In this document: positions 6,001 through 37,808 of the stretch, one piece after another
Numbering within the stretch: position 1 is the first letter of the stretch
Layout: every line of letters begins with the position of its first letter
Source: Bugula neritina
Taxonomy: Eukaryota; Animalia; Bryozoa
Direction of reading: 5' to 3'
Length of the DNA: 64,000 bases
NCBI GenBank assembly: GCA_964035545.1
Contig: OZ037765.1
Span: 26,287,504-26,351,503, forward strand
Position numbers and translations under genes: made by a program
Notes under the pieces: generated by a model
Seen by the model: the letters and a program-made list of their open reading frames with translations, nothing else
Databases searched by the model: none
What the model was told of the DNA's origin: nothing

Positions 6001-9000
6001 TCACTGCTCCTTTGGGCTAAATACTAGATATCGGCTACACCGAACTTACGTTGACCTTGGGACGAGTGAACAGGCTTATAAGATCTTTGCTTTTGTAATG
6101 CAAATCTTCCGGAAGATTAAGAGACTGTTTCTTATACCTGCAAAGTCAACGAAATTTCAACTGTATGACTTTTAGCTAATAGAAGAAAAATGCCTGCTCA
6201 TGGCCAGGTCACTTACGCAGCACATTGCATGCATCCAGTAAATCAACTTAAGACGATGAACTAATCACTTTTCAAGCAGCCAGCCACGAGGTGAATACAG
6301 ATTACACCTTGTTAATTTCTAATCAGGTAAGACAGGGGTGAGTATGTCTGTACAGCGGAGGGTATTTTGAATAAGGATTACAATCCCTTCAGAAAATATA
6401 TCTACATGGTGAAGCATTTCTTACATCCTAACCTCTGGCAAGTGAAACTATTATAATTCAAATGCTCCATAAAGTGCATAAATGTAAAAAATTTGAAGTG
6501 CCAGTGTTAGCAGTCTTGCAATTTATCTGAGAAAGGCCTGGAATTAACATTATTAGCAGATAAATCTGCATATGGTAAAATGGAATTTTGCACTGTTAGG
6601 AACTCATATTTTTATGCATAAATAAAAATATTGGAAGAGTATTAAATTGAATTATATTGGCAATAAATATAAATAATAAATTGACGGCTCAATACATCAA
6701 TCTTGTATATAATATGTGACCTTTTACCAGAGAAGCAGTTCAAAACATAATTCATCACCTATAAAAGCTAAGTTGCAGAGCCACTTGGTGACAAGGATTT
6801 TATGATAGTATAAAGAGATTAATTTGCAATGGCAGCTATTAGACCTGTCAATAAGTACCCTGAAATAAGGTTTCCCAAAATTAAAATGATATATGCATTT
6901 CAGGGAACTAATATTTACATTGCAATGCCAGGTGATAACAAACAGTAACATAATAAACTGGCTAATTTTCCAACACTATTAATAATTGCACAAACAAACA
7001 GCTTTGCAATAGGCATGTCGATAATGGAAGAAAAACATTTCAGCCTTAGTATAGGCATGAGCATTTTTGTCAAGTTTTACATCTGCAAACCAATGGGAAC
7101 AGAAACTAACCACTAATACGTGACAAATGGCTAATCGTGCAACAGTAAACACTGTAAATACAATAAATTACTTATAACATTTATAGGTAATAGACCCGCT
7201 ATCCAAACAGAACATAGTGGATATAGGTGAGAACTTATACGCAATAGTGTTATAACTCATGCTATAAATGGGAAACAAATTACAAACCTCTCTAGTGTCT
7301 GCTTGGTGACAGAAATGGCAGCTCTGGTCTTTTTAAACATTTTATCAAAATCAATTTCAGCCTCAAAGTCAAAGACAAATTGCTTCTTCTCTGTTGCCAG
7401 CTTTTTAACTTTTATTGTATTTTCTTGGTCTTCACCTGAAAGGAAAGGGAAACAGGTGGCTTAACAAATTGAAAACAACTCCAATAGTTCTATTCACACA
7501 TGCAGTAGCTAAACAACACACAATAAAACTGATAGTAGGCTGTTTTCTTGGAATTGTCAACTCAATGCAAGCCTGGCATTTATCACATGATATACTACAT
7601 GTGACTCAGTGATGTGTATATATAATGAGTGCCTAGAGTGGAGAAAAGTTACACATAAATTTGTGAAGCAGATGGTTCTCAAATATTCTTCAGCAACTTA
7701 TCAGATCCAACTCACCCGCCCTTTTGCCACCTACAATAGAAAACACCCCAGAATTATAATGACGTTTGAAATTGCTTCATGAATAATCTTCAAATTTTTT
7801 GAAGAAAAAATAATGCCTTTTTTAATAATAAATATCATGAATATATCTAATACAGTACCAAGCATGTTGAGTCGCTTAGCCTTCCAGTAGCCAGGACCAG
7901 CCCACATGTTTTTCATACCACCAAAGAACGAGTAGTCGCCGCCACCACCCGTTACCAGAGCAAGCAAACTGTTGAATGTACCATCTCTAAAATATTTCAA
8001 AAGATTTTAAGACATAAAACAGTAGTTTTGTTGGAGACTCATCTCCAAAAATATCATCACCTCAATAACAATATTTATTTAAACTACCATCAGATGTTAA
8101 CAGTTCTTGGGCCACTAGAGTAGTTGGACAAACTAAAGACACCTTTTGCAATAAACATGTAATTCTTAGAGTAAAAGGGTGAATAAGTGGAGTGAAAAAA
8201 TCATCAAACAGCACGACTCTAACAGATAACATTGTCTCATACTATGTGTTTTGTATTGAGCTTCATAGAGCTGTAAGCACTAGGAGAAAGGTTGTAACTA
8301 TAGAAACAGCAAACAAAATGTTTACCAGAATCATTTTAAAATACTGGCGAAAATATTGCGTGAAGCCAATTTATTAAATTGTGTTAAACTGATGCAATTA
8401 TCACAGTGTTTATTGTTATAACTGCCCACATTATTATTTTGAAACAGGCAAGTTACAGCTGAGTAGTCAAGTAAAAAATTAACTTAGATACTTTATAGAA
8501 AACTAAATTGGACATGATAAGTTTAATAAACCATACAGTGTGATATAAATACTGAGGTACGAGAATGAATATTAGGAGTTGTCAGTCCTGCCGTTTATTT
8601 ACTGGATTATAGAGTTATCATTCCAGAGATAATGCTCTACTCACGCGGCGAATGTTGTTTTGGTATTTGTGTTGGCTGATTTACCAAAATAATTCACAAT
8701 TTCGCTTTTATCTTCTCCTTCATCCATCATGTTGACATCTACAGTTTCACACCAGCAATGATTAGGAAACAAATAATGTGGCGAAAGAGCAGACAACTGC
8801 AAGAAATGCAAATGTAAGTCACAAGATATTACTATCACCGTCATCGCCAAAAGAGTTGTTAGCAAAGTCTGCTATGTCGTCATCAGCTGGAGGTATTTCT
8901 TTGTCTCGATTAAATTTGAGCTCATCATCTTTGCAGTCTAGAGCATCAAATATAGGATGCTGCAACAATACACACAACACTACAGTATACACACAACCCT

Positions 9001-11731
9001 ACAGTATACACACAACACTACAGTACACACAACACTACAGTATACACACAACACTACAGTATACACACAACACTACAGTTACAGTAAATACACAATACTA
9101 CAGTACACATACAACACTACAGTATGCACAAAACACTACAGCTACATCATTACTCTTACAAAATAGATTTGTAATACGGGAGTAACAACTCGCATGCACC
9201 ATTCTCAAGGCATATATACAACAAAATATTACTCAACACAATTAAAATACGAAAACATTTGAACTGAAGTCTACCTGAGTTTCTTCACCAAACTGAAACT
9301 TATAGAACGTTGGGCAGATAACTTGTGTAGACAAACTAATCTGAGGGAGATCTACAAATAGAACAGCTTTATATTATCTACACACTTGCTATAGTGTACA
9401 CCATATTACATACTATATCATCTACACACTTGCTATACTGTATACCATGTTACATACTATATCATCTACACATTTGCTATAGTGTATACTGTGCACCATA
9501 TTACATACTGTATCATCTACACACTTGCTATACTGTACACCATGCTACATACTGTATCATCTACACACTTGCTATACTGTAAACCATATTATGTACTATA
9601 TCATCTATACACTTGCTATAGTGGAAAAGGTTATACGGCTGCAATCTAAAGACTACGTAGCATGAACACAAATGTTATTGCACTGAGTGAAACTCTATCA
9701 CAGCAAACATATACCTGCATGAAGAATGTAATGGTGAGAATAATTCCCTTGCTTAGTTTACTCAACTACTCACTCTTCTTGCTGCAAAATCACTCTGAAT
9801 CTGGTTAAGTCAATCAGCTAAACCCTACACTGTGAAGGTTTAAAGCTGATTAAATCACATAAAAGACTCACCATGTTCTTCAGTAGAAGTATCTTGTAAC
9901 CGGAAGCCTTCAGGAGCCTCAGTGCTACATTGCATGTCCAACATCAGGGCGGGGATGTCATACGCGCACCTCAGAGAACCTAGCAACAGGCCACCAAAAC
10001 TCGAGTCTCCTTCTTTTGATAAATTTTGAAGAAGAGGATCAATCTATCAAAATGTATCAAAGATTTAATAAGTTCACGAAGCAATGTTGAGATAAAACAA
10101 AGTAACATGTCACATTATTACACATTTGCCGTCTGTTTAATGCAATCTGTGTTCATATAATCAAAATCACACTCATATCAACTACAAGTTCTACAAACGC
10201 ACCTCATGGGCTTGGTCTATACCAGAAACATTTATCTTTTGCAAATCTGTTTCAATAATTTTCTTTTTTCTTTTATCCGAATTTTTCCGAACTCCTGGCT
10301 CCCCTCCTTCTTTACCGCCGTCTTCTGCTGATTTACTGTTTCCCGATTTATCACCTACGAGCAATCAGCCGCCATGAGTTTAAAGTTTAACAATCGGGTC
10401 GAAAGTTCGCATAAAAACATAACTGATTGTACATATATATGTATTAATCAAACAACCATATTTTAATTTTTAGAAAGTAATTTTTTACCATCTTTATCGA
10501 GCTGACTAACTTGGTCTAGAAGCTGAATAGCCTGAATGTGAAGAGCATCGACTCTGCTAGCATAGATCTTGGCTCCCGCTTCTATTGAAGAACCTGCCAT
10601 CTGCAAATCATACATATTAGAAAGCATTAGCTCCATCCATTTAACCAGGAACTCTACCGGTTATTTCAGTAATAGTCAAGTGACTACTGTGAATTAGTGC
10701 AAGAAATTGGTTGTTTAGGAGATAAGGTCACTAAAATATAAAATAAAAATTATTTATTGTTTTAATTAAATAAAGAAAATAAAATAAAAATAACCAAGTT
10801 TATGCTACGAATAGAATTTTATAAAAACAAAACAAAACTGATCCATGAAGACACAACTCAGTACCTGAAAATTAGTCTCTTTCTCTTTCCGAAGCATATC
10901 TTTCATTGTGTCTATCAGATGTAGAGAGAAAGCGTTTCTTGCAGTGATTTTCTATAAAGTATGAGACCATAAGCATTGAGCAAGTGGGCAGGTTTAGAAG
11001 CATCTTTCAGTAGCTAGATAATTATGAAAATGAGACTGCACCTAGGTCAAAAAAGCAATACCCCCCTGCAAAAAAAATCTTTTGCTAATAATTACTGTTT
11101 TGAAATTATTTGATACTAAATACCAGCATCACTATTTGCGAATGTCAATACTGTTTTTGCTGTCAGTCCTACACAATTATACACTAATTAGGTTATTGCA
11201 TATTTGCAAAGCTTACATTGTCTTTAGAAAGCTGTATACAGTTGTAAAGATGTTCGGTTATTTGAGAAGCGTTCCACCCAGCTAGATTGGAAACATTTCG
11301 TCTGAAAAATATGCAAATAATTAGCAAATGTTAAAATATTATAATACAGGTCAACAGAATCAGCAGAACATGTTTAAAAATCACAATCCCAAAATTACAT
11401 CCGAAACTAACTAACTCCAGAAATCTGAGTCAAGACACTATAAGCTTGTGCGAGAACAGTTCTGTAATAGAGGATACACATACTTCTCAGAGGCGGGACT
11501 GTTGAGATGATTTTGGGCAGCATCTGACAGCCGAGCTTTTAATCGGCGCTTCTTCTCAGAATAGTCATCATTAACCAGATGCGATAGCATGGGTGAGTTG
11601 AGTGGGCTGTTGGCAAATATCTCAACATTTTTCTTATGTGTAGCTGGAGAGAGGTTGGAAGGCGTGCTCCCCTGTGGTGATGGTTGTACACTTAGTCTAC
11701 TGGCAATTTTTAGTCGAGACTTGGAGGACAT
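33..11731 (-). CDS. NCAPH: Condensin complex subunit 2 (CAP-H/Barren kleisin), multi-exon, complete CDS
   Basis: Manually spliced GT-AG exons give family motifs in the right order: QITEHLYNCIQLSKDN/KITARNAFSLHLID (~11217-11301, 10865-10951), AGAKIYASRVDALH (~10489-10601), QVICPTFYKFQF (~9275-9351), DYSFFGGMKNMWAGPGYWK (~7858-7986), DYNYFNKNDTANFCP (~5429-5531), VEKISLQYAKRPKKVDFKRLKRNMW (~2198-2302), LSPPIAFVALLHMCNEK (~1486-1652) and last exon NLMLKATNSLFDDLEIFAGED* (stop at 33-35). ATG at 11731, just after an acceptor at ~11751. Confidence 0.95.
7716..7730 (-). other. Candidate 15-nt symmetric microexon of NCAPH (adds GGKRA)
   Basis: Minus strand reads attgtAG|gtggcaaaagggcgg|GTGAGT. It is phase 1-1, matching the flanking NCAPH exons. 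Confidence 0.6.
8966..9140. repeat. Degenerate intronic minisatellite (ACACTACAGTATACAC-type), abutting an NCAPH acceptor
   Basis: Visible tandem cacaacactacagtatacac units. It produces the low-complexity ORFs 8957..9166 and part of 8778..9185. Confidence 0.9.
9370..9622. repeat. ~47-bp minisatellite, about 5 copies, in an NCAPH intron
   Basis: Recurrent unit atcatctacacacttgctatactgtacaccatattacatactat. Confidence 0.9.
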
Positions 11732-11949
11732 TTTCACCAACAGCAGCTACCTACCGAAATATATTAATTTCAAGCATTTAAAAATGTGTAAACCTGATAG
11801 GAATTTATTTTAAAATTATCAAATAAAACAACAAAGCATAAGACAATGTTAATAAAACCGAATTTGATAGTTTAACTTTTAGTGAGTATTGTAAGTACAA
11901 TTGTAAAATTAATATAGACTTAGAAAGTGTTATTCAGACACTGATAGTC

Positions 11950-13619: not shown

Positions 13620-14240
13620 ATTTAAGTAACTGTAACTGTAAGTAATTATAATGATAATTATTATAAATATAATAGATCAAGTTTAATACTAACACTAAGT
13701 CTAATACTAGTACAGTAGTACTAGTAGTAATACTAAAGTCTAAAAGTAAATACTAATACTAATAGTAATACTAGTAATAGTAATACTAATACTAATAGAT
13801 TCAACTTCAAGTTTAACTTTGTCTTTAGGAATCAAGTTTTAGTGTACTGTGTAGAGCTAGAAATAGACTCCACCTTGGAATTGCTATTACTATTACTATT
13901 ACTATTACTATTACTATTAGGCTTTGAGTTTGATTTTGAGTCACACTGTGACTCACGGTGACACTGAAAGTGTCCAGTCGTTTTAAAAGGAATGTTTTTT
14001 GATCTCCTTACACTTAGTTTTATAGTTAGTATTACTCATAGTGATAGTCATACTCATAGGTTTTATATTTACTAATTTAGTCAATGTCATTATTATTATT
14101 ATTAAGTTGAACGCTAGTCATTATCATGATGATTACCAATATTCTTTATCATTATGATAATGACTATAAGTATAATGAACTTGAAGACATAATCATTATA
14201 ATAATTCTTCATATTGCTATTTAGTCGTAGTGATTATTTA
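13620..14240. repeat. Degenerate hexamer-periodic low-complexity tract (right flank of the promoter)
   Basis: tactaa tactaa tagtaa tactag (13751-13800), (tattac)n (13885-13918), ttactc atagtg atagtc atactc (~14032-14056). Confidence 0.75.
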
Positions 14241-14491
14241 GTTTTACCTGTATGAGTATCCCACTTTTTTGACGATTATCACATTGACATGATGTTTCAG
14301 TTATGTCAATTTAGAAACATAAAGCTAGAGTTTGTGATTAGAGACATTTAGATTTTGTAAAATATAGGTCTTTATTATACTTATGATTGTACTAATATTT
14401 TGTTTTTAGCTTGCATGTTGATACTGATTAATTTTGAAGATATTAATTGTAAATTTTGTCATGCTCGTCATTTTTTTGTTTATTTTTAGAG

Positions 14492-17400
14492 ATGGCTACG
14501 AAGAATGTGGTTGCATGGGGTTCAGCTGGTGTTGCTATTTATTTTGGAGTGTTTGGAATACAAAATGGACTGCTCATTTTCTTTTCATTGTTATCATTTA
14601 TAATTGGGTAAATATTTCATATCCTTTTACATAAATTGTTATAGATTATTTTCAATGATGGTGGCTTTTTGATCAAAATTATGCAAACATTTTAATAACA
14701 GATATGCACATGCACATGCACATGATGTAGCTGCAACAACATGCTTTTAACTGGACATGCAAGAAATTGTTTCTAACTAAAGGACTTATTACCAAATAGT
14801 GAACTAGGCCGGTCTTTCACTTTAATCTTCTGTAGTGCTTCAATTTATTTGTGGTTACTAATTACACCACATTCTACCCAGTTTCCCAGAACCCCACTGT
14901 CCCCCCCCCATACTGTTCCATCAGTCCTGCGCTCCACCAGCCTCACAACCACCTAGGAGTAGTACTACATTACACTGAAGGTCGAAATAGCTTGTAAAAC
15001 CTTCTGACCTCACCAGGAATCGAACCTCAAATCCAACTTGCAAGCCATTGTGCTAACCAGTACGTCCCCTGATTCAACAGAAATGTCAATATGAAGTGTT
15101 CTTTGTTTTAGGGGCCGTACTGGTTGCAGCAGTCGTGTTAGCTCACAGTGGATGCTAGTTACCATGTTTTTGGTACATTATTTGAGTGTTTGCTATGGTA
15201 AAGAATGTTCACGAGAGAAATCTCAGCAAGCTCGACTTATTATTAACAAAGTAGTTGTACCCATGTACTCGATAGGAAGTCTAGATATGCCCGACACATG
15301 TCCGTTTTCTCCTGTAAATGATCAATACGCATCACAAGAAGCTATGAAGAGACGACTTGGCAGCAAATGGATGTGCTCAGTTTGTGCCAAGACTTTTCCT
15401 ACTGAGAATGATTTAGATTCGCATCTCAATGATAATCACCAGAACTTAAATCACTATGCAACTGGTGGCTGTCTAGCAGACCTCTGTGATATTTTGAGAT
15501 GTGGACCGTTTTTCGACTTACCTCAAGAGAAAACTAGTTGTGATGAAGTTGCTATGTCAGAGTTGAAATTGAAGTGCATGAACATGGTGAGAGATTCCTG
15601 CTCACCTGCACGTCTTAGCCCACAAGGGCGAGTAGAAGTTGAAGTTCGAGTTCAAGCTAGTGTGTGTTCATATCTTACATGTGATGAATATTGGACTACA
15701 CCTGATGAAGACCCATCAACTGAACATTATTATTATACAACTTATGCATTAGCTTTCTGCATACTGCTTACATTATTGGCTATATATTTCAAAATTGCCA
15801 CTTCTAACATTGATAATAGTGTGTCTATTGAGACCATGCTGGCAGAGGCGGACAACTTGCAGAGACCAGAGCCAGCCATAATATCGCCAGATAATAATGA
15901 GATGGAGATCCGTCATAGAAACCCTACAAGTCAAAGACAATGGTCTGAGAATGAATAATTGAATTGTTAATTTTGTAGCGATAACTCTCGCATTGGTCAG
16001 TATTTTGTAGACTGAGCTAGTTTATATGCTGTTATTCTTATTGTACTTTTACTTGATGTATTTTGTATGGCCTATTTGCTTTTAGCTATTCTATAGATAT
16101 GCTTACTATCTACATTACTCCTGTTTATTAAACTTGTAACCTTGTTATTCAGAATAAATTTGTAACCTGTACTAATCTGTGTAATTGTTAAAGGCAGGGC
16201 TGGTCGTTGGAGTATGGTAGCAGAGCCGTAGGTGATAGCAAACTGGCATATGTTCATGATTACTGTCATGTGACTCTGAAGGCCCTTGGGTCATGTTGAA
16301 AGCAAAAAGTTGATAGTTTACCTAAAAAAGCCAAACCATGACTCATTCTCACAAAGATTGTGACTATAAATGAATTTTAACATATGATAGATATAAAATT
16401 TTTAATTTAGATAAAATAAAACCAGGTAATTTACTTCTGCCTCGGTTATAAATGTACCCACAATATAGTATAAACTGTTTTGTATCCATTTGTTAGCTCA
16501 GGGGCTGTGTGCTTATACTATGGTAAAATTCTATCGGATGCTACCTACGGTCAAACAAAAGTCCCGTTGACACCGAGCTCTGTTGGAATACCTAAGGTAA
16601 TAGCTGTAGTCAAAGGAATTTATTTGTTGATGGATTAATATTATAGCTAATACACTTGCATGTAGTCATTATTAGTTTATAATTCCAGTATTTGCAAAAT
16701 GTATATGTTTGTGACTTAACTTATGCGTAAATAATTTTCTCAAGTTTAAATTTGCTAAGTAATTACTAACTATAAGTTTGGTAGGGTCACAAGGGCCTCA
16801 TCATTGTTTTACAGAGCTCATTTGAGGACTAATATATAAATAGATTGTATCTCTATTTTATATTATTAATGAGTTGCTGAGTTTATACTCTAACTGGATT
16901 TTACTAGTTGATTGATCAGATGGATGACATAAATCTACAAGCTAAACCTGCTAAACTAGATAGAAGACTAACTGGTGCTAGTAACATTGATGAGCAACTG
17001 CAGGAGGTTATGGACCACCTATTTAGAGATTATATTGAAGTGTGGTATCGAGAAATTAGTGATGATAATAGCTTTCCCCTAGAAATTAGAAAAATGTTTT
17101 CCATTGTGGTTTCCAAGTTTGCATCGAGGTGAGTATAGCATGTTGTGCATATACATGTATTCTAATAGCATTATTGGAGTTTTAGCTTTAATATGAAATT
17201 CAATTTCTTCTACCAGTCATTTAATATTTGCCATTTTAGCTTCCAGAAAGCTAGTGTAATAATACCACCGTTTAAAATGCTTATTTTCATTTTTAGCTGC
17301 AACTTAGACACACTTGCTCAGAGTGTTTAGAAGACTACCTAATAAAATGATTGAAGATTTGAAATCACTCAATAGGTGCAATTAGCTCAATTCACTTGGT

Positions 17401-20400
17401 TGCACAGCTCTGAAATTGTGTTTAGGTTGTAGCTTAGATATTTATGAATAATAATTGAATATTGTATGCGTATAACTAAATAAGTTTGTTTTAAACTAAT
17501 ATTTCGCCTCATACTTGTTTTAAGAGCTAAAGAAATCGATTGGACACCATTTATAACTCAGAAGCTGGTTGACGAACTGGCGTCTCATGTTAAGTTATAC
17601 AGACGGGCTGACCAAAAACTTCATGAAGAGTTTTCTGGCAACTCCACGCATGCAGAAGGTGGGTACAAGCTTCAGAGAATGAGCGGTAGGGTACCACCAT
17701 TTATATTCTTATACAAGTTGTTGTCACATGTACTCCTTTGTTGTTTTTAGAAGATGATAAGAATAATAAGCTGGAGCAGTATTTCTTTGAGTTTGAAATG
17801 GAGATGGAGGGTAATATTTGTAGAAAAGCAGTTTCTACAGAAGAAGAGCATGAAAAAAGTAGGTTGTTAATCACTGAGAGCTTACATACTCTTGCTGATA
17901 TGTAGTCATAACTATGTGCTATAGTGTCTTGCTGTAACTTGCTTTCTGTACGTTACAGATCTACCAAAGAAATTCAAAGAAATTTCTCATTTCAACAATT
18001 TTGGCATATATTGTATTTATTAAACCTCCAAATTATTCGAAGCTTTTTAAATTGATCAATAAATTATTTTCTAATGCTTTTTATATAATTCAACATTTAA
18101 ACAGTGCATTATGCATACATATGGCAAATGTCATACCAGACTAGCAATATTAATCTATATGCTACAGTTGTGTATATTCTAAGACATATATGTTACATTT
18201 AGTGCTTATGTAAGATTTATACACTACATTTACTGTGTAATGTGTATATAAGATGTATATGCCACATAAAATCTAACTCGTAGGATATTTCCAAGAACTC
18301 ACAGAATCTCTCCTTTTCTTCCTTCTGCCTGATGAAATCTTTGACCAGCGAATGTTCAGGTTTCTGATTAGAGAAGTTCTTGTAAATGGAGTCATCCTTC
18401 CTACATTTAACAAGCTGTCTCAACCTGATTATGTTAATCAGAGCATTATATGGATGGTGAGAATTAAATGTCTCTTATTGAAGGCATTTTCTGTCGAAAA
18501 ACATTCTCACTAGTCAGGTGTGATGACAGTTACACTTTCTTTATTGCCTTCTGTTTTATTACTAATGTACCTCTAAGATTTTTTTACTGTTGAGTTTTGT
18601 AAAACAGGAGGATTTTATTCAAAAGTACTTAATGTACATGCAGGTCTCGCCTTGCAACTACATCAAATATGCTGTTGCAGTTTTACCAACACTGCACACA
18701 AGAAGCTCGACCATGATTAGATCTGAATGTCCCTCTATTTGCACAACTCTAAAAAGAAGACAACTACTAGTTATTTTGTAGAGTTGCAAATATTTTGGAC
18801 ATATAGTTTAATGACAAAAAGAAGCTTTTTGTTGGTTAAAATAATATATTGCAACTGATGACATATTTTTATCAATATTTTGGCGAACTACGTGATCATT
18901 TGCGAAGTTGAAACTGTTTAAACTAGAGCATTTCAATCTCGAGCATAAAACTTCTTTAAATTTTTATCTATCAATTGTGCTCTAATATTATTAGCATTAA
19001 GTGTTTGACTCTACTGCTTTGTGATGTTACTTGTACTTGTAACTAATTGCAGAACTTTGACAGCCTCCTAAGTAGTGACGCCTTCATAACAACTGTAAAA
19101 CTAAGCAACAGCATTGATGAAGTACAGAGTATTCTAGTTAAAGTGAATGACGAGTTATCTAGAGTGAGAGCTAAAGATACAGGGGGAGTTGACGGTAAGT
19201 GAGGCTATTTGAAGAGGTTGTGTTTTTATTGCTCAAATCTAAGTCTATTTCTTGTGAATTTCCTAACTACAGATTTGATTGAACAGATTTTAGTTTGCAG
19301 GTAAAGGATCTGGCTAATGATGCACATCATTATGATTGGATAAAATTAAGTTTTTCACAGTTCTGCTTTTTAGCGCACTAATTCTCGTTTTTAATAGTGT
19401 GTAAATTATTCTTTATTTTCATCTCTACTACTAGATCTAAACTTAGTCTGTGGCTTCAATGTATTTCTAGATTCTTCCATCAAGCAGACATTAAGCAGTC
19501 TATCCTACCTGAAGAGGGTTTGTGAGACGCAAATCACGCAATTAGCCATGAGTTCATCAGCAGCTGCAGACTGCAACGATACTGTGGTGTGTATATATTG
19601 TGTATACTGTAGTGTGTACAGTGTAGTGTGTGTATACTGTAGTGTGTATAGTGTAGTGTGTATACTGTAATAGTGTGTACGCTGTAGTGTGTATACTGTA
19701 ATAGTGTGTACGCTGTAGTATGTATACTGTAGTGTGTGTACGCTGTAGTATGTATACTGTAGTGTGTGTACGCTGTAGTATGTATACTGTAGTGTGTATA
19801 CTGTACTGTGTATACTGTAGTGTGTACAGTGTAGTGTGTGTATACTGTAGTGTGTATAGTGTAGTGTGTTCACTGTGGTGTGTATATACTGTGTATAGTG
19901 TAGTGTGTGCACTGTAGTGTGTATACTGTAGTGTGTTTACTGTAATAGTGTGTATGCTGTAGTATGTAAAGTGTAGTGTGTGTATACTGTAGTGTGTATA
20001 CTGTAGTGTGTATACTGTAGTGTGTATACTGTAGTGTGTATACTGTAATAGTGTGTATACTGTAATAGTGTGTACGCTGTAGTGTGTATACTGTAATAGT
20101 GTGTACGCTGTAGTATGTAAAGTGTAGTGTGTGTACGCTGTAGTATGTATACTGTAGTGTGTGTACGCTGTAGTATGTATACTGTAGTGTGTATACTGTA
20201 CTGTGTATACTGTAGTGTGTGTATACTGTAGTGTGTATACTGTAGTAGTGTGTATACTGTAGTAGTGTGTACGCTGTAGTAGTGTGTATACTGTAGTAGT
20301 GTGTACGCTGTAGTAGTGTGTACGCTGTAGTATGTATACTGTAGTGTGTACGCTGTAGTGTGTATACTGTAGTGTGTATACTTTAGTGTGCATACTGTAG

Positions 20401-23400
20401 TGTGTATACTTTAGTTTTATGTTGCAGGATGCATTATCTGATTTGAGCCTGAAGCCCACCACCACTAGAAATCTGCCATTTGTGTTTGTGACTACAAATG
20501 ACCTTGGCATACAGTACTTCAATGGTAGGGCAACATATCTAGCGTGATTATTAGGCCCTCAATTAGCTGGTAAAGCTAACACATATTTCATAGAAATACA
20601 ATGTCATTTTGATGCTAAGTTGTGACTAACTTTATGTCAGGTTGAGTGAAGTAATACTGAATAGTTAAACACATATAGTATGGTGAGTCTGTAGATAGAC
20701 TCTACTATGGACAGCTGAGCTTAAAATCTTGCTTTGTACTTATGCATGGCTATTGGTTATTCTAATTGCTCAATTTTTTGAAGAACTGTCCCAACATCTA
20801 TTATAATAATTGATAAAGCCACTAAAACCTGATGCTCCGTGAGTTCCAACTGTTCCTACTAATGTTATGTCCATACCTAGTATACCAACTAATTTACACA
20901 CTGATTAGCAAGGACTCAACTAGTGGGAAATACACACCCATGCTTTAATACTTTTACACCTGAAGCCACAACTATGGGCTTATTTGGGATTCCTTGATAT
21001 TATTTTGAAGAGACAACTCTTAACTGCAATTAAATTAAATTAACTGAATTAAATTAGCAAACAAATTACGCTAGATAGTAGAAGTTATCTTGCCATTAAT
21101 TGGTTGCCATGCACGATTCACAATATGGCACCAAAAGGATTAATTTTAATAATCTATTGTTGTTTTACCTTTTAGATTATCTCATAACTCATGAAAAGGA
21201 GGTTTATCTGAACATCTACTTTGATCTCGAGGTACAAAATGTTGTAATACGAAATTTGTTTTACTGTAAATTGTATTGACTTTTATTTCTATTTAATGCG
21301 TGTTGCGAGTTTGGGTGCACATATACATTATAATATATTTAAATAAAATGTAAATATCTATTAAATTCAGTACTTAGAACTACCTGCTTGTTGTTGACTT
21401 TTAAGCGAGTTTCATAAAAAATTTATTTCTTTTTATTGTTTATTACACCAGCTTTCTGGAAGTTGAAATGGCAGATATTAAATAACTAGTAGAAGAAATT
21501 GAATTTCATGTTAAAGTGTGTACACTTGAAATACTCATACCATACTCAAATAATGCTATTTAAACATGCAAACATGCAACTTGGAAACCACAATGGAAAA
21601 CATGTTTTGTGTGTTTCTAGGGGAAAGCTATTATCATCACTAATTTCTTGATACCATACTTCAATATAATTTCTGAATAGGTGATATGTGACTTTTTATT
21701 GTTATTGTTTATTTCAGTTTTGTGACAAACGTGATCCCACAGCAGCTCAAAGTGGTAGACCAGAAGGTGACAAGATCTCTATTTCCATTGTCGAAGACAT
21801 CTATGAGAAGTATTTTGCTGAAACTGTACCTAATCTACAAATAAATCCATCCTGTGTGGAACCAATCACACGATGTCTGAAAGAGCGTAAAGTTATCGCC
21901 ACCGTATTTGATAGCCTCCACGACTCAGTAAGTGATATCTGCATTACCCGTTGATTTTAATCAATTATATATTTGGATTAATGCTGAAAAAATCAATTGA
22001 ATACTGCAATTAATCAGACAGCCAAAATTTTATCTGATCCATTAAAAAGTAGCTTGTGGGTTGACTTGGCTGAGTGTTGGGGCGTAGTGTAATATTTAGA
22101 AAGTTGTTAAGAAGAACATAGGCTATTCAAAAATGTATAGAAAGTATAGATTTTGCTCGTTAGTAAATATGTCTGTTTACCATTATTTTGTCCACTTTAC
22201 AGTTCATATTCATATAAGAATTGTTATACTTCAACTTTGTTTTGGATTATATTATAGCAATAGGTAGTTTATCATTTACTTGTCTTATATCTTAGGTAGT
22301 GGAGAAGTTAGAAAAGTTTTATGAAGATTTTAAAAAAGACCCGCTTTACGTCAAGATGTTAAGAGAGTTAGACTTAGACATAGGTTCCTCTCTTTCTGAC
22401 GAGTCAGAAGATGGTAGGTTCACTGTCTACATTGCATTGCTCACTACTTGTAATAGACTAATTGCTGACAATTTAGCTTCGATTGTTTAAAATGTCTGTA
22501 ATTGCTTTCGAGAGTTTTGTCTAGTATATAGTTTGAATTAAATCTGATGTATTCGTTGCTAGTATAAAGTTTTAAATTCTTTTAGTGGTTTAATACATTT
22601 CTGTAAGCATTTGTTGAAGCCAAATTATTTTATTAAAAAACATTTTAGTCATTTCTTAAATTTAAGCAAAAAATGTAGTACTATTAGATAAAATACCGAA
22701 CCTAAGCGTCCGAGTGTTGTACTAAAATAATTTTTACCTGCAACTTAGTAATTATTACAACAAAGAACTAACATGCTAGGCATAAAATATTGTATACTTG
22801 ATAAAACCCATTTAATGTCTTAAAATTTTATCAAATATTTAATCAAACTGTAAAATTAGCTGTTTTCAATGACCATTGTTTTGATGAATGTTAAATAGCA
22901 TGATACTATCAAGAATAAGGTTATTATATAATATTGTACATCTGTAGCTACCTCTATACCAGAGTCTCGAACTTTCAAACCAGGCACCAAAATAACAGCA
23001 GCCATTATCAAAACAGGTTTGCCATTAATTTTACTAAAGTTCTTATGCTAAGCTGAAGTTGTGCTGTTTTATTTTAGCTCAGTTATACTGTATTAAACAT
23101 TGATTATCTGTTTAGTATGTGCCACAGTCTTATTGTATTTTAATTTACTTTACGATTTTCTACGTGGTAAATAACATATAAATTACGTCTTTCAGCAGCG
23201 TCAGATACTGGTGAGTATGCTATTTCTATAGGTTGCAGGTTGAATATTTTCTATCCCAATGCCTACAGTATTTTTATTTGTTGTAAAATTGTTGTTGGAA
23301 AAATTTCGGTTGTATATAGTTTCAGATGTGTGTATATTTGTGGCTAGAGTTCTCACTCAACTTTAATAGATCTGTCAAAGGACAGGGCGTAGTACAGATA

Positions 23401-35100: not shown

Positions 35101-37808
35101 TTTATTTACACTTCACTAGACTGGTAAATGGGATGTTTGCATTTTCAACATTGGAAACACAATGGAGAATGTCATTGTGCAAGTTGAGTCTACAGCCAGA
35201 ATTGCTTCCAGCACATCAACCAATCAAAACGGTGAAGATTTAGAAAAGCTACTGCCTATCACAGTTCGGCCTTTCATTGTCAACAAAGAACCAGATTTTA
35301 ATGACTTTGGTACGGTTTAAGTTTATGGATTTTCAAAGAATAAATCTTTTAATTTCGTTCTTGATCAAACTTTCAACTTTTTTCAAAGCTCAAGTTATTA
35401 AACAAGCAAATTATTGTTATATATTTTAAACAGATGCAGAGCCAGTGTCAGTGTTTGCTACTGTGAACCGTGGATACTCACCAGTGATTGGTGCCAAAGT
35501 AGTCGCTACTATAGAATATCCAGATTCTTATTCCAAATCAGAACTTGAGATGAGAGATGATGGAGCAGGAGCTGATATTATTAAAGGAGATGGCACATAC
35601 TCGGTGTATATTGTGAATGCTCAAATTATCGGCAAACATACAATATCTATTCATGTGATAAATTCCAATGATACGAGAATCAAGAATGTAAAAACTGTTA
35701 GTGCTGCAAGTAGAATATCTAGTAAGTGTCTAATATTTATAGAGTTTTATTAAATCAAAGTTACACGTAATATAAGATCTAATTTTCTAAGTTTCTGTAT
35801 AGCAAAAAAGTTGAATCAATCCTACAATGTAAACCAAACTCTTTTTGCCATTTTAAAGAGCCTGGAGATCCAATAGGCATCCAGAAAGTTGAACTGGAAG
35901 CAACTGGAAATTTTCAAAGGTTTTCGCTTGCTGGATTCATTGATGTAAAAAGTGTAGCCCCACCTACCAGGGATACAACTGCACCTTCAAGAATTCTTGA
36001 TCTGAAAGTGACAGAAGCATCTTATGATGAAAGTAGAGTGACATTAGAGTGGACTGCAGTTGGTGATGATTTAGATAGTGGAACAGGTACGCGCAGTTGT
36101 CCCTTTTAAATATTTTGGTCTGTAGTTACACTTAACAACTGATAAAAATTCCTATTACAGAAATGACATAAAGTTCTGTGGATTGCAGATACTAAATGCA
36201 TGGTTTGACCATTCACATATAATTCATTGTAGTTATTCTAAATATTTGAATTCTCTAAACCCTTTTTACCCTTTAGCTTCTTATTATGAACTGTGGAAAG
36301 CTGACAGTCACAAAGTATTATATAAAGCCAAAGAAAATGCCACAAAAGTTGAGGATGCTGATATCATAAGTGGGAGCTTGAGTTCTCCATCTCCAGCCTA
36401 CACCAGAGAAAAACTGGTTCTGAATATACAGGATAGAGACGACATATCTGTGTATGCTATCATTGCTAAGGATGATGCAGGAAATGCAGGACAGTTATCC
36501 AACATTGTTTCTGTTAAACTCGTCTATATACCCCCGACCACTACGCCAACTACTACACCAACCACTACACCAACCACTACACCAACCACTACGCCAACCA
36601 CTACGCCAACTACTACGCCAACCACCACGCCAACCACCATGCCAACCACCACGCCAACCACCACGCCAACCACCACGCCAACCACCACGCCAACCACTAC
36701 GCCAACCACCACGCCAACCACTACGCCAACCACCACGCCAACTACTACGCCAACCACCACGCCAACCACCACGCCAACCACCACGCCAACCACCACGCCA
36801 ACCACCACGCCAACCACCACGCCAACCACCACGCCAACCACCACGCCAACCACCACGCCAACCACCACGCCAACCACCACGCCAACCACTACGCCAACCA
36901 CCACGCCAACCACTACAACCACCACGCCAACCACTACGCCAACCACCACGCCAACTACTACGCCAACCACTACACCAACCACCACGCCAACCACTACGCC
37001 CACCACCACGCCAACCACTACACCAACCACCACGCCCACAACCACGCCAACCACTACACCAACCACCACGCCAACCACTACACCAACCACCACGCCAACA
37101 ACCACGCCAACCACTACACCAACCACCACGCCAACCACTACACCAACCACCACGCCAACAACCACACCAACCACTACACCAACCACCACTACAACCACCA
37201 CGCCAACCACCACGCCAACCACTACACCAACCACTACACCAACCACTACAACCACCACTACAACCACCACGCCAACCACTACAACCACCACGCCAACCAC
37301 TACAACCACCACGCCAACCACTACAACCACCACGCCAACAACCACACCAACCACTACACTACCATCTACTCTACTACCGACCACTACATCACCGACCACT
37401 ACATCACCAACCACTACACCATCAACCACTGTGCCACCAGCCACTACACCACCAACCATTACACCACTAACTGCTCAACCACTAGCTCCCCATCAGATTG
37501 CTAGCATCCTAACACCAACTACTAAGTCTTCAATTTTTGCTCTTAATACAGGGTATCCGTTTGGTGTTGATAATTATATTATCATTGGCATTGCAATAGG
37601 AGCTGTTATCTTAGTTCTAATTGGAGCTTTTATTTCTGTACTAGTGTGTGGCTTTAGAAAGAGAGGTTCTATGAATGTAGTTGCATTGGCTAACACTGCT
37701 ACTCACAATTCAATTTACAAATCTAACAATAAAGCCTGTTTGCAAAGTTTTGCTGTCAACAGCAACAAGCAAGTCAGCACTGTGAGTGACTTTAAATATA
37801 TTGTGTGA
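29200..37808 (+). CDS. CLCA-like protein copy 1 (calcium-activated chloride channel regulator family; metalloprotease + vWA + FN3-like + long mucin stalk + TM)
   Basis: About 14 GT-AG exons: signal peptide + LRNNGYENVLIAI, HEWGHLRWGLFEEYP, FCDD..HNYEAP..QN..C, vWA VMDVSGSM / GGSTAIGKGL / ILLTDGQEN, SPVIGAKVVATIE..MRDDGAGAD..DGTYS, APSRILDL..LEWTAVGDDLDSG, then a terminal exon with the Thr/Pro stalk and TM. Confidence 0.92.
29985..30065. repeat. Short 14-bp tandem repeat (atagcatatgtat-type) in a CLCA copy 1 intron
   Basis: Direct inspection. Confidence 0.7.
36531..37460 (+). repeat. Coding 12-bp minisatellite (CCAACCACCACG) encoding a (PTTT)n mucin-like stalk
   Basis: About 930 nt in frame within the terminal exon of CLCA copy 1. 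Confidence 0.97.

What the first reader, a model, noticed from the sequence alone, without database searches (positions are those of the whole stretch)
14492..16596. An unrelated zinc-finger membrane-protein ORF inside SNX13 is in frame with SNX13's first coding exon: one locus, two proteins
Seen in sequence: the SNX13 exon 14492-14607 (116 nt, hydrophobic N-terminus) ends in phase 2 (ATT GG|gtaaat) and normally joins 16497. Within this intron, a good acceptor (ttctttgttttAG, 15110-15111) opens an exon at 15112. The join GG+G then reads GRTGCSSRVSSQW without stops into the ATG at 15152 and the 268-aa ORF, giving a predicted 320-aa fusion. An AATAAA (16153) lies between the stop and the next SNX13 acceptor. 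Inference: the ORF is an alternative terminal exon selected by intronic polyadenylation. The SNX13 promoter, and possibly its ER membrane anchor, would then produce two unrelated proteins in a mutually exclusive way. The in-frame join has a 1-in-3 chance prior, and the ORF also has its own signal-like N-terminus, so sharing only the 5' UTR/promoter is also possible.
Basis: partly seen in the sequence, partly recalled or inferred. Interest (0 to 1): 0.85.

Follow-up and report, generated by a model that had tools for sequence, protein, structure and literature searches.

The report
Gene hitchhiking on SNX13's first exon
In moss animals (bryozoans), an old membrane-protein gene has lost its introns, moved into the first coding intron of the lipid-transfer gene SNX13 and shares that gene's start codon and membrane-anchor exon, so one locus yields mRNAs for two unrelated proteins, an arrangement known from a few other genes but not found reported for this one.

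Summary
Confirmed, with RNA. SNX13 coding exon 14492-14607 splices either to 16497 (SNX13) or to 15112 (a cysteine-rich, single-zinc-finger membrane-protein exon; 320-aa in-frame product). Both joints appear in all four RNA-like runs laid (three studies), at similar contig depth; no joint runs from the nested exon on to SNX13. The phase-2 acceptor and open linker are kept in eight bryozoan-type lineages, six of them with SNX13 exons on both sides; three have no ATG before the signal-like stretch, so the ORF cannot start alone. NCBI's Watersipora model is the same fusion. In annelid, oyster and hemichordate the gene is free-standing with 7-9 coding exons; here it is intronless and single-copy. 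Best reading: an orphan retrogene captured as an alternative terminal exon of SNX13, of the Su(var)3-9/eIF2gamma kind known from insects, with the twist that the shared exon is a membrane anchor. Not shown: poly(A) site, translation, regulation, whether the anchor stays on the mature protein.

The parts
14488..14489 (+). Splice acceptor in front of SNX13 coding exon 1; RNA contigs carry a 12-15 nt loose 5' end here (cis UTR exon or spliced leader, unresolved)
14490..14607 (+). Shared first coding exon (ATG 14492; 38 codons + 2 nt; two hydrophobic stretches = SNX13 N-terminal membrane anchor); phase-2 donor GTAAAT
   Evidence: single copy in genome
14608..15111 (+). 504-nt intron removed in the nested-protein isoform; GT..AG; low-depth unspliced contigs also cover it
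15112..15151 (+). Start of the alternative terminal exon: basic linker read in frame (G-R-x-G-C motif kept in most lineages)
15152..15958 (+). Intronless ORF (268 aa): signal-like hydrophobic stretch, cysteine-rich domain with one C2H2-like finger, one transmembrane helix, short tail; the genome's only member of an ancient eukaryotic family
15959..16170 (+). Probable 3' UTR with ATTAAA (16127) and AATAAA (16153); cleavage site not shown
16497..16596 (+). SNX13 exon 2, the competing acceptor (joint 14607->16497)
16908..17128 (+). SNX13 exon 3, start of the PXA domain

Best explanation
A processed (intronless) copy of an ancient single-pass membrane-protein gene landed in the first coding intron of SNX13 in an ancestor of these bryozoans; a phase-2 acceptor near its old start made it an alternative terminal exon, and the parent gene was lost. 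One pre-mRNA now gives two mRNAs: donor 14607 joins 15112 and the transcript ends in the intron (320-aa protein), or it skips to 16497 (SNX13). Both start at the SNX13 AUG. Shown: both splices in RNA, conservation, intron loss, single copy. Inferred: retroposition as the route, intronic polyadenylation near 16150-16180, translation, and topology: anchor hairpin, basic cytosolic linker, then the old signal sequence acting as an internal signal, probably cleaved before the first conserved cysteine, so that the mature protein resembles the ancestral type I protein and the SNX13 piece mainly supplies promoter, start codon and ER targeting.
For:: joints 14607->15112 (depth 22, 22, 31, 16.5) and 14607->16497 (26, 25, 37, 30) in four runs, three studies; exon-1 contig depth near their sum in three of four; no joint from the nested exon to 16497. 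NCBI Watersipora subatra protein (317 aa) is this fusion, two exons, upstream of PXA-RGS-PX-Nexin_C; same acceptor and phase in eight lineages; linker length varies only by whole codons; no ATG before the hydrophobic stretch in L010, L014, L023. Owenia, Saccostrea, Glandiceps orthologs are free-standing, 9, 7 and 8 coding exons with shared intron positions, own N-terminal signal, other neighbours; no second copy or parent in the genome; these ORFs form one clade (100) among animal homologs; separate hydrophobic segment after the linker in all five fusions tested.
Against: RNA evidence is assembled contigs from a related strain (about 96% identical), run type 'RNA' is a guess by the tool, and contigs show neither 5' nor 3' ends nor true levels. 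No poly(A) remnant or target-site duplication was sought or expected at this age, so retroposition rests on the loss of all introns and the move. No protein-level evidence. A very diverged multi-exon parent could be missed by the genome search. Cleavage of the internal signal is inferred from hydropathy only.
Confidence: 0.85

Rival explanations
1. The shared exon is spliced on, but protein is made mostly from the ORF's own ATG (15152) by leaky scanning or re-initiation; only promoter and 5' leader are shared.
For: ATG 15152 opens a signal-like N-terminus of the ancestral kind; five of eight lineages keep a Met in that stretch.
Against: The SNX13 AUG lies upstream, in frame, with G at +4; the Met position drifts between lineages and is absent before the hydrophobic stretch in L010, L014, L023; the linker frame is never broken.
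Confidence: 0.06
2. The fusion keeps the SNX13 hairpin: the internal hydrophobic stretch is not cleaved, giving a new multi-pass ER protein whose location or function depends on the SNX13 anchor. (Same gene structure as the best explanation, different product.)
For: Linker motif G-R-x-G-C and the hydrophobic segment are conserved; the bryozoan clade sits on a long stem (1.22), compatible with changed function; arthropod homologs also have a conserved, long N-terminal hydrophobic region.
Against: The segment ends in small residues just ahead of the first conserved cysteine, as in free-standing orthologs with ordinary signal peptides; exon-1 conservation is explained by SNX13 alone.
Confidence: 0.25
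3. An ordinary nested gene with its own promoter in the intron; the joint to exon 1 is minor splicing noise.
For: Low-depth contigs cover the intron 14579-15140; contigs cannot exclude an internal start.
Against: The joint's contig depth is close to that of the SNX13 joint in all four runs; the intron contigs are continuous with exon 1 (unspliced RNA) and four- to seven-fold shallower; three lineages lack a usable ATG.
Confidence: 0.03
4. The gene reached the intron by DNA-level rearrangement and lost its introns one by one or by mRNA-templated recombination, not by retroposition.
For: No retroposition scars identified; timing of intron loss and move cannot be ordered with these samples.
Against: All six or more ancestral introns are missing in every lineage while SNX13 around it stays intron-rich.
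Confidence: 0.1

Closest known systems
Su(var)3-9/eIF2gamma fusion of insects (PMC1435931)
   Same: One large exon of an unrelated gene inside a conserved host intron, spliced alternatively to the host's first coding exon(s); proposed retrotransposition; free-standing genes in outgroups; kept over a long time.
   Different: Here the shared piece is a membrane anchor of two secretory-pathway proteins; the guest splice seems about as common as the host splice (contig depth, rough), whereas Su(var)3-9 is described as weakly expressed; no read-through product with both exons was seen here.
Chimeric and orphan retrogenes of mammals, e.g. Taf9/Ak6 (PMC4772013)
   Same: Retrocopy in a host intron expressed with the host's upstream exons; orphan retrogenes replace a lost parent.
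   Different: Here both features coincide and the shared exon is coding and in frame.
ChAT/VAChT cholinergic locus (PMC3053374; details from own knowledge)
   Same: Intronless gene in the first intron of another gene on the same strand, shared 5' exon.
   Different: There the shared exon is non-coding and the two genes act in one pathway; no link between SNX13 and this protein is known.
Eukaryotic single-C2H2, cysteine-rich type I membrane protein family (plant 'C2H2-type domain-containing protein'; recalled as At5g63280-like, PMC9237531)
   Same: Signal, cysteine-rich domain with one finger, C-terminal transmembrane helix; atlas feature score 0.96-0.97 and TM 0.61-0.62 to plant and arthropod clusters.
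   Different: Bryozoan member has an added SNX13-derived N-terminus. Identity of the atlas clusters with At5g63280 itself was not tested; the family's function is unknown.

Membership tests
Su(var)3-9/eIF2gamma-type chimeric orphan retrogene | Guest coding region is one exon inside a host intron, same strand | tested here: met
   exon 1 upstream and SNX13 exon 2 or PXA downstream in window, L001, L002/L004, L007, L014, L023
Su(var)3-9/eIF2gamma-type chimeric orphan retrogene | Spliced in frame to a host coding exon while the host mRNA is still made | tested here: met
   both joints in four runs; NCBI Watersipora model
Su(var)3-9/eIF2gamma-type chimeric orphan retrogene | Outgroups have a free-standing, intron-bearing gene | tested here: met
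   (annelid, oyster, hemichordate); brachiopods, phoronids and freshwater bryozoans not sampled
Su(var)3-9/eIF2gamma-type chimeric orphan retrogene | Parent gene lost | tested here: met
   one full match; other hits are weak and confined to the finger. This genome only.
Su(var)3-9/eIF2gamma-type chimeric orphan retrogene | Retroposition scars (poly(A) remnant, target-site duplication) | not testable with these tools
   flanks are too diverged between lineages
Alternative terminal exon by intronic polyadenylation | Cleavage and poly(A) addition inside the host intron | tested here: inconclusive
   hexamers 116-260 nt after the stop in window, L007, L014, L023 (560 in L001); RNA contigs fade at 15960-15990 with no onward joint, but contigs cannot show ends
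Ordinary nested gene | Own start codon ahead of its signal sequence | tested here: not met
   absent in L010, L014, L023; present in the window
Ordinary nested gene | Own transcription start | not testable with these tools
   only contigs available
C2H2 zinc-finger DNA-binding proteins | Cys2-His2 finger motif and fold | tested here: met
   Pfam zf-C2H2_jaz and zf-met just above cut-off; C, C, H, H conserved in 121 sequences; two strands plus helix in the model
C2H2 zinc-finger DNA-binding proteins | Nuclear or cytosolic location, nucleic-acid binding | not testable with these tools
   predicted topology puts the finger in the ER lumen between a signal and a transmembrane helix; not filed as a transcription factor
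SNX-RGS sorting nexins (SNX13) | N-terminal membrane anchor, PXA, RGS, PX, PXC | tested here: met
   PXA in window exons; PXA, RGS, PX, Nexin_C in the Watersipora ortholog; hydrophobic exon 1; architecture per PMC8864675
SNX-RGS sorting nexins (SNX13) | SNX13 rather than SNX14/19/25 | not tested
   rests on recalled similarity of exons 1-3 to SNX13; no tree built

The most novel reading that the evidence does not exclude
The splice choice is a regulated switch at the ER: the SNX13 anchor stays on the fusion (or its cleaved hairpin persists), placing an uncharacterised luminal zinc-finger protein at SNX13's ER-lipid droplet/lysosome contact sites and trading SNX13 output against it; the long conservation would then point to the function of a pan-eukaryotic orphan family in lipid or ER biology.
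Probability: 0.12. Interest if true: 0.8.

Novelty: new member of a known kind. Interest (0 to 1): 0.57.

Why it matters
Long-lived cases of two unrelated proteins sharing a first coding exon are rare (the textbook one is Su(var)3-9/eIF2gamma). This one is RNA-supported, conserved across distant bryozoans and shares a membrane-targeting module, so it tests how an N-terminal anchor and an internal signal peptide combine after gene capture. It is also a rare genomic change usable as a phylogenetic marker within Bryozoa, a warning for annotation (the NCBI Watersipora fusion model holds SNX13's first exon) and for knock-downs of exon 1, which would hit both proteins.

Tried and rejected
Independent nested gene and chance phase match: rejected on RNA joints and conservation. 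Read-through product containing both exons: no such joint. Parent or second copy: none with own protein, a 121-sequence profile and two outgroup proteins. Function from structure: model pLDDT 88 but no PDB fold beyond the finger (Foldseek none at E<=0.001; best VIA Z 6.0 to ARS2 over 66 residues). L002-L006 are genomic contigs of a sibling strain, not transcripts. Literature searches for SNX13 with nesting/intronic polyadenylation, SNX13 in bryozoans, and trans-splicing in bryozoans found nothing on this locus. The 12-15 nt loose 5' end has no reference: it was compared once in a script with the window and fetched loci (no convincing match) and left out of genome-wide searches. The careful tree did not finish; the quick tree is cited.

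Full report
Observation. The exon with ATG at 14492 has 116 coding bases and ends in phase 2 at 14607 (TTGG|GTAAAT). An acceptor AG at 15110-15111 follows a pyrimidine tract; joining it gives an open frame through ATG 15152 to the stop at 15958, 320 aa in all. Joining instead to 16497 continues SNX13 in frame. ATTAAA (16127) and AATAAA (16153) lie between the stop and the next SNX13 acceptor. Downstream exons encode a PXA domain. The organism is a bryozoan: the nearest named homolog is from Watersipora subatra, and an earlier scan note names this genome as Bugula neritina (unchecked).

RNA. Contigs of four RNA-like runs from three studies (a related strain, about 96% identical) were laid on 13950-18500. 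All four hold both joints: 14607->15112 at contig depth 22, 22, 31 and 16.5, and 14607->16497 at 26, 25, 37 and 30. The exon-1 contig has depth 56, 19.5, 74 and 49, near the sum of the two branches in three runs. No joint leads from the nested exon on to SNX13; its contigs end at 15960-15990. Shallow contigs (depth 4-5) run from exon 1 through the intron and read as unspliced RNA. Contig depths are rough and contigs cannot show starts or ends, so equal abundance and the poly(A) site are not established; the existence of both splices is.

Conservation. The NCBI protein of Watersipora (317 aa) is this same fusion: a 116-nt exon in phase 2 plus one long exon, upstream of a PXA-RGS-PX-Nexin_C gene. 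A phase-2 acceptor at the matching place, followed by an open linker, is present in eight lineages: the window with its sibling strain, L001, L007, L010, L014, L016, L017/L020 and L023. Where flanks reach, SNX13 exon 1 lies upstream and SNX13 exon 2 lies 326-1299 nt after the stop. Linker lengths differ only by whole codons and most start G-R-x-G-C. In L010, L014 and L023 there is no ATG between the acceptor and the signal-like hydrophobic stretch, so there the ORF can enter the secretory pathway only through exon 1. These proteins are 50-63% identical to the window ORF and form one clade (support 100, quick tree). Species of the metagenomic loci are unknown; one record name suggests a plastic-debris metagenome, which by my recollection is rich in membraniporid bryozoans (not tested).

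Origin. A profile search found hundreds of relatives across eukaryotes, named in annelid, molluscs, echinoderms, hemichordate, cnidarian, flatworm, arthropods and protists and plants. None but the Watersipora protein carries the SNX13 exon-1 peptide. In Owenia, Saccostrea and Glandiceps the gene is free-standing with other neighbours and has 9, 7 and 8 coding exons with shared intron positions. The bryozoan copy has none of these introns although SNX13 around it is intron-rich, and it is the only copy in the genome. That is the pattern of a retrocopy that replaced its parent; the route is inferred, since scars are not recoverable.

The protein. After the linker come a hydrophobic stretch (fusion residues 53-66), a domain with about twelve conserved cysteines and one C2H2-like finger, a transmembrane helix (248-269) and a short tail. 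The model is confident (pLDDT 88) but matches no solved fold beyond the finger; it matches plant and arthropod family members (TM 0.61-0.62). A review lists Arabidopsis At5g63280, which I recall as a family member, with a secretory prediction and an N-glycosylation site between finger and transmembrane helix (PMC9237531), consistent with a luminal domain. Function is unknown; it should not be filed as a transcription factor.

How it works. Shown: one donor, two acceptors, two mRNAs with a common AUG. Inferred: the proximal choice is coupled to cleavage near 16150-16180. In SNX13 the N-terminal hydrophobic region anchors the protein in the ER (PMC8864675). In the fusion the same hairpin is followed by a basic linker and the old signal sequence. 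The simplest topology has the linker in the cytosol and the signal acting internally, with cleavage before the first conserved cysteine releasing a mature protein like the ancestral one (my estimate about 70%); retention of the anchor in a new multi-pass protein is the alternative (about 25-30%).

Comparison. The architecture is that of the insect Su(var)3-9/eIF2gamma fusion, a single large guest exon in a conserved host intron, alternatively spliced, attributed to retrotransposition (PMC1435931), and of chimeric and orphan retrogenes such as Taf9/Ak6 (PMC4772013). It differs in sharing a membrane anchor and in the guest splice not appearing minor. Paper searches found no report of this locus; the scan's notes had none near it.

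Limits and steps left out. The joined model was not sent to search tools; exons were searched apart by reference. The short loose 5' end seen before 14488 has no reference and was left out of genome-wide searches; together with the six-base-periodic tract upstream it is compatible with the trans-splicing proposed in note s1-481163. No protein-level, 5'-end or 3'-end data; no brachiopod, phoronid or freshwater bryozoan sampled; SNX13 versus its paralogs rests on recalled similarity.

Verdict. Real, expressed, conserved; a new member of a rare known kind. Interest 0.57.

Noticed in passing
   Followed up: partly
window 21440-21683 (- strand): Inverted, frameshifted copy (80% identical) of window 17016-17262, i.e. 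the 3' half of SNX13 exon 3 and the start of the next intron, inside the SNX13 gene; could pair with the pre-mRNA.
   Followed up: partly
window about 8100-11760 (- strand): Multi-exon gene head-to-head with SNX13 that looks like condensin subunit NCAPH/barren (recalled from sequence, not tested). Upstream neighbours differ in L007 (C2-WW-HECT ligase).
   Followed up: no
L001 10001-21668: In the Watersipora annotation the SNX13 product on record starts about 7.7 kb downstream, at the PXA exon, while SNX13's first exon is assigned to the nested protein's model and exon 2 (12967) lies between them.
   Followed up: partly
window 15152-15958 homologs (P0021, P0034, P0038, P0043): Arthropod members of the family have a conserved long N-terminal hydrophobic region and a long insertion splitting the domain in two.
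   Followed up: no
window 14950-15080: Short repeated element in the shared intron with tRNA-like/SINE-like wording; RNA contigs from elsewhere in the genome lie on it.
   Followed up: no
window 19579-20415 and 36537-37471: Long tandem arrays (14-nt unit x57; 12- and 15-nt units) that create the spurious long ORFs.
   Followed up: no
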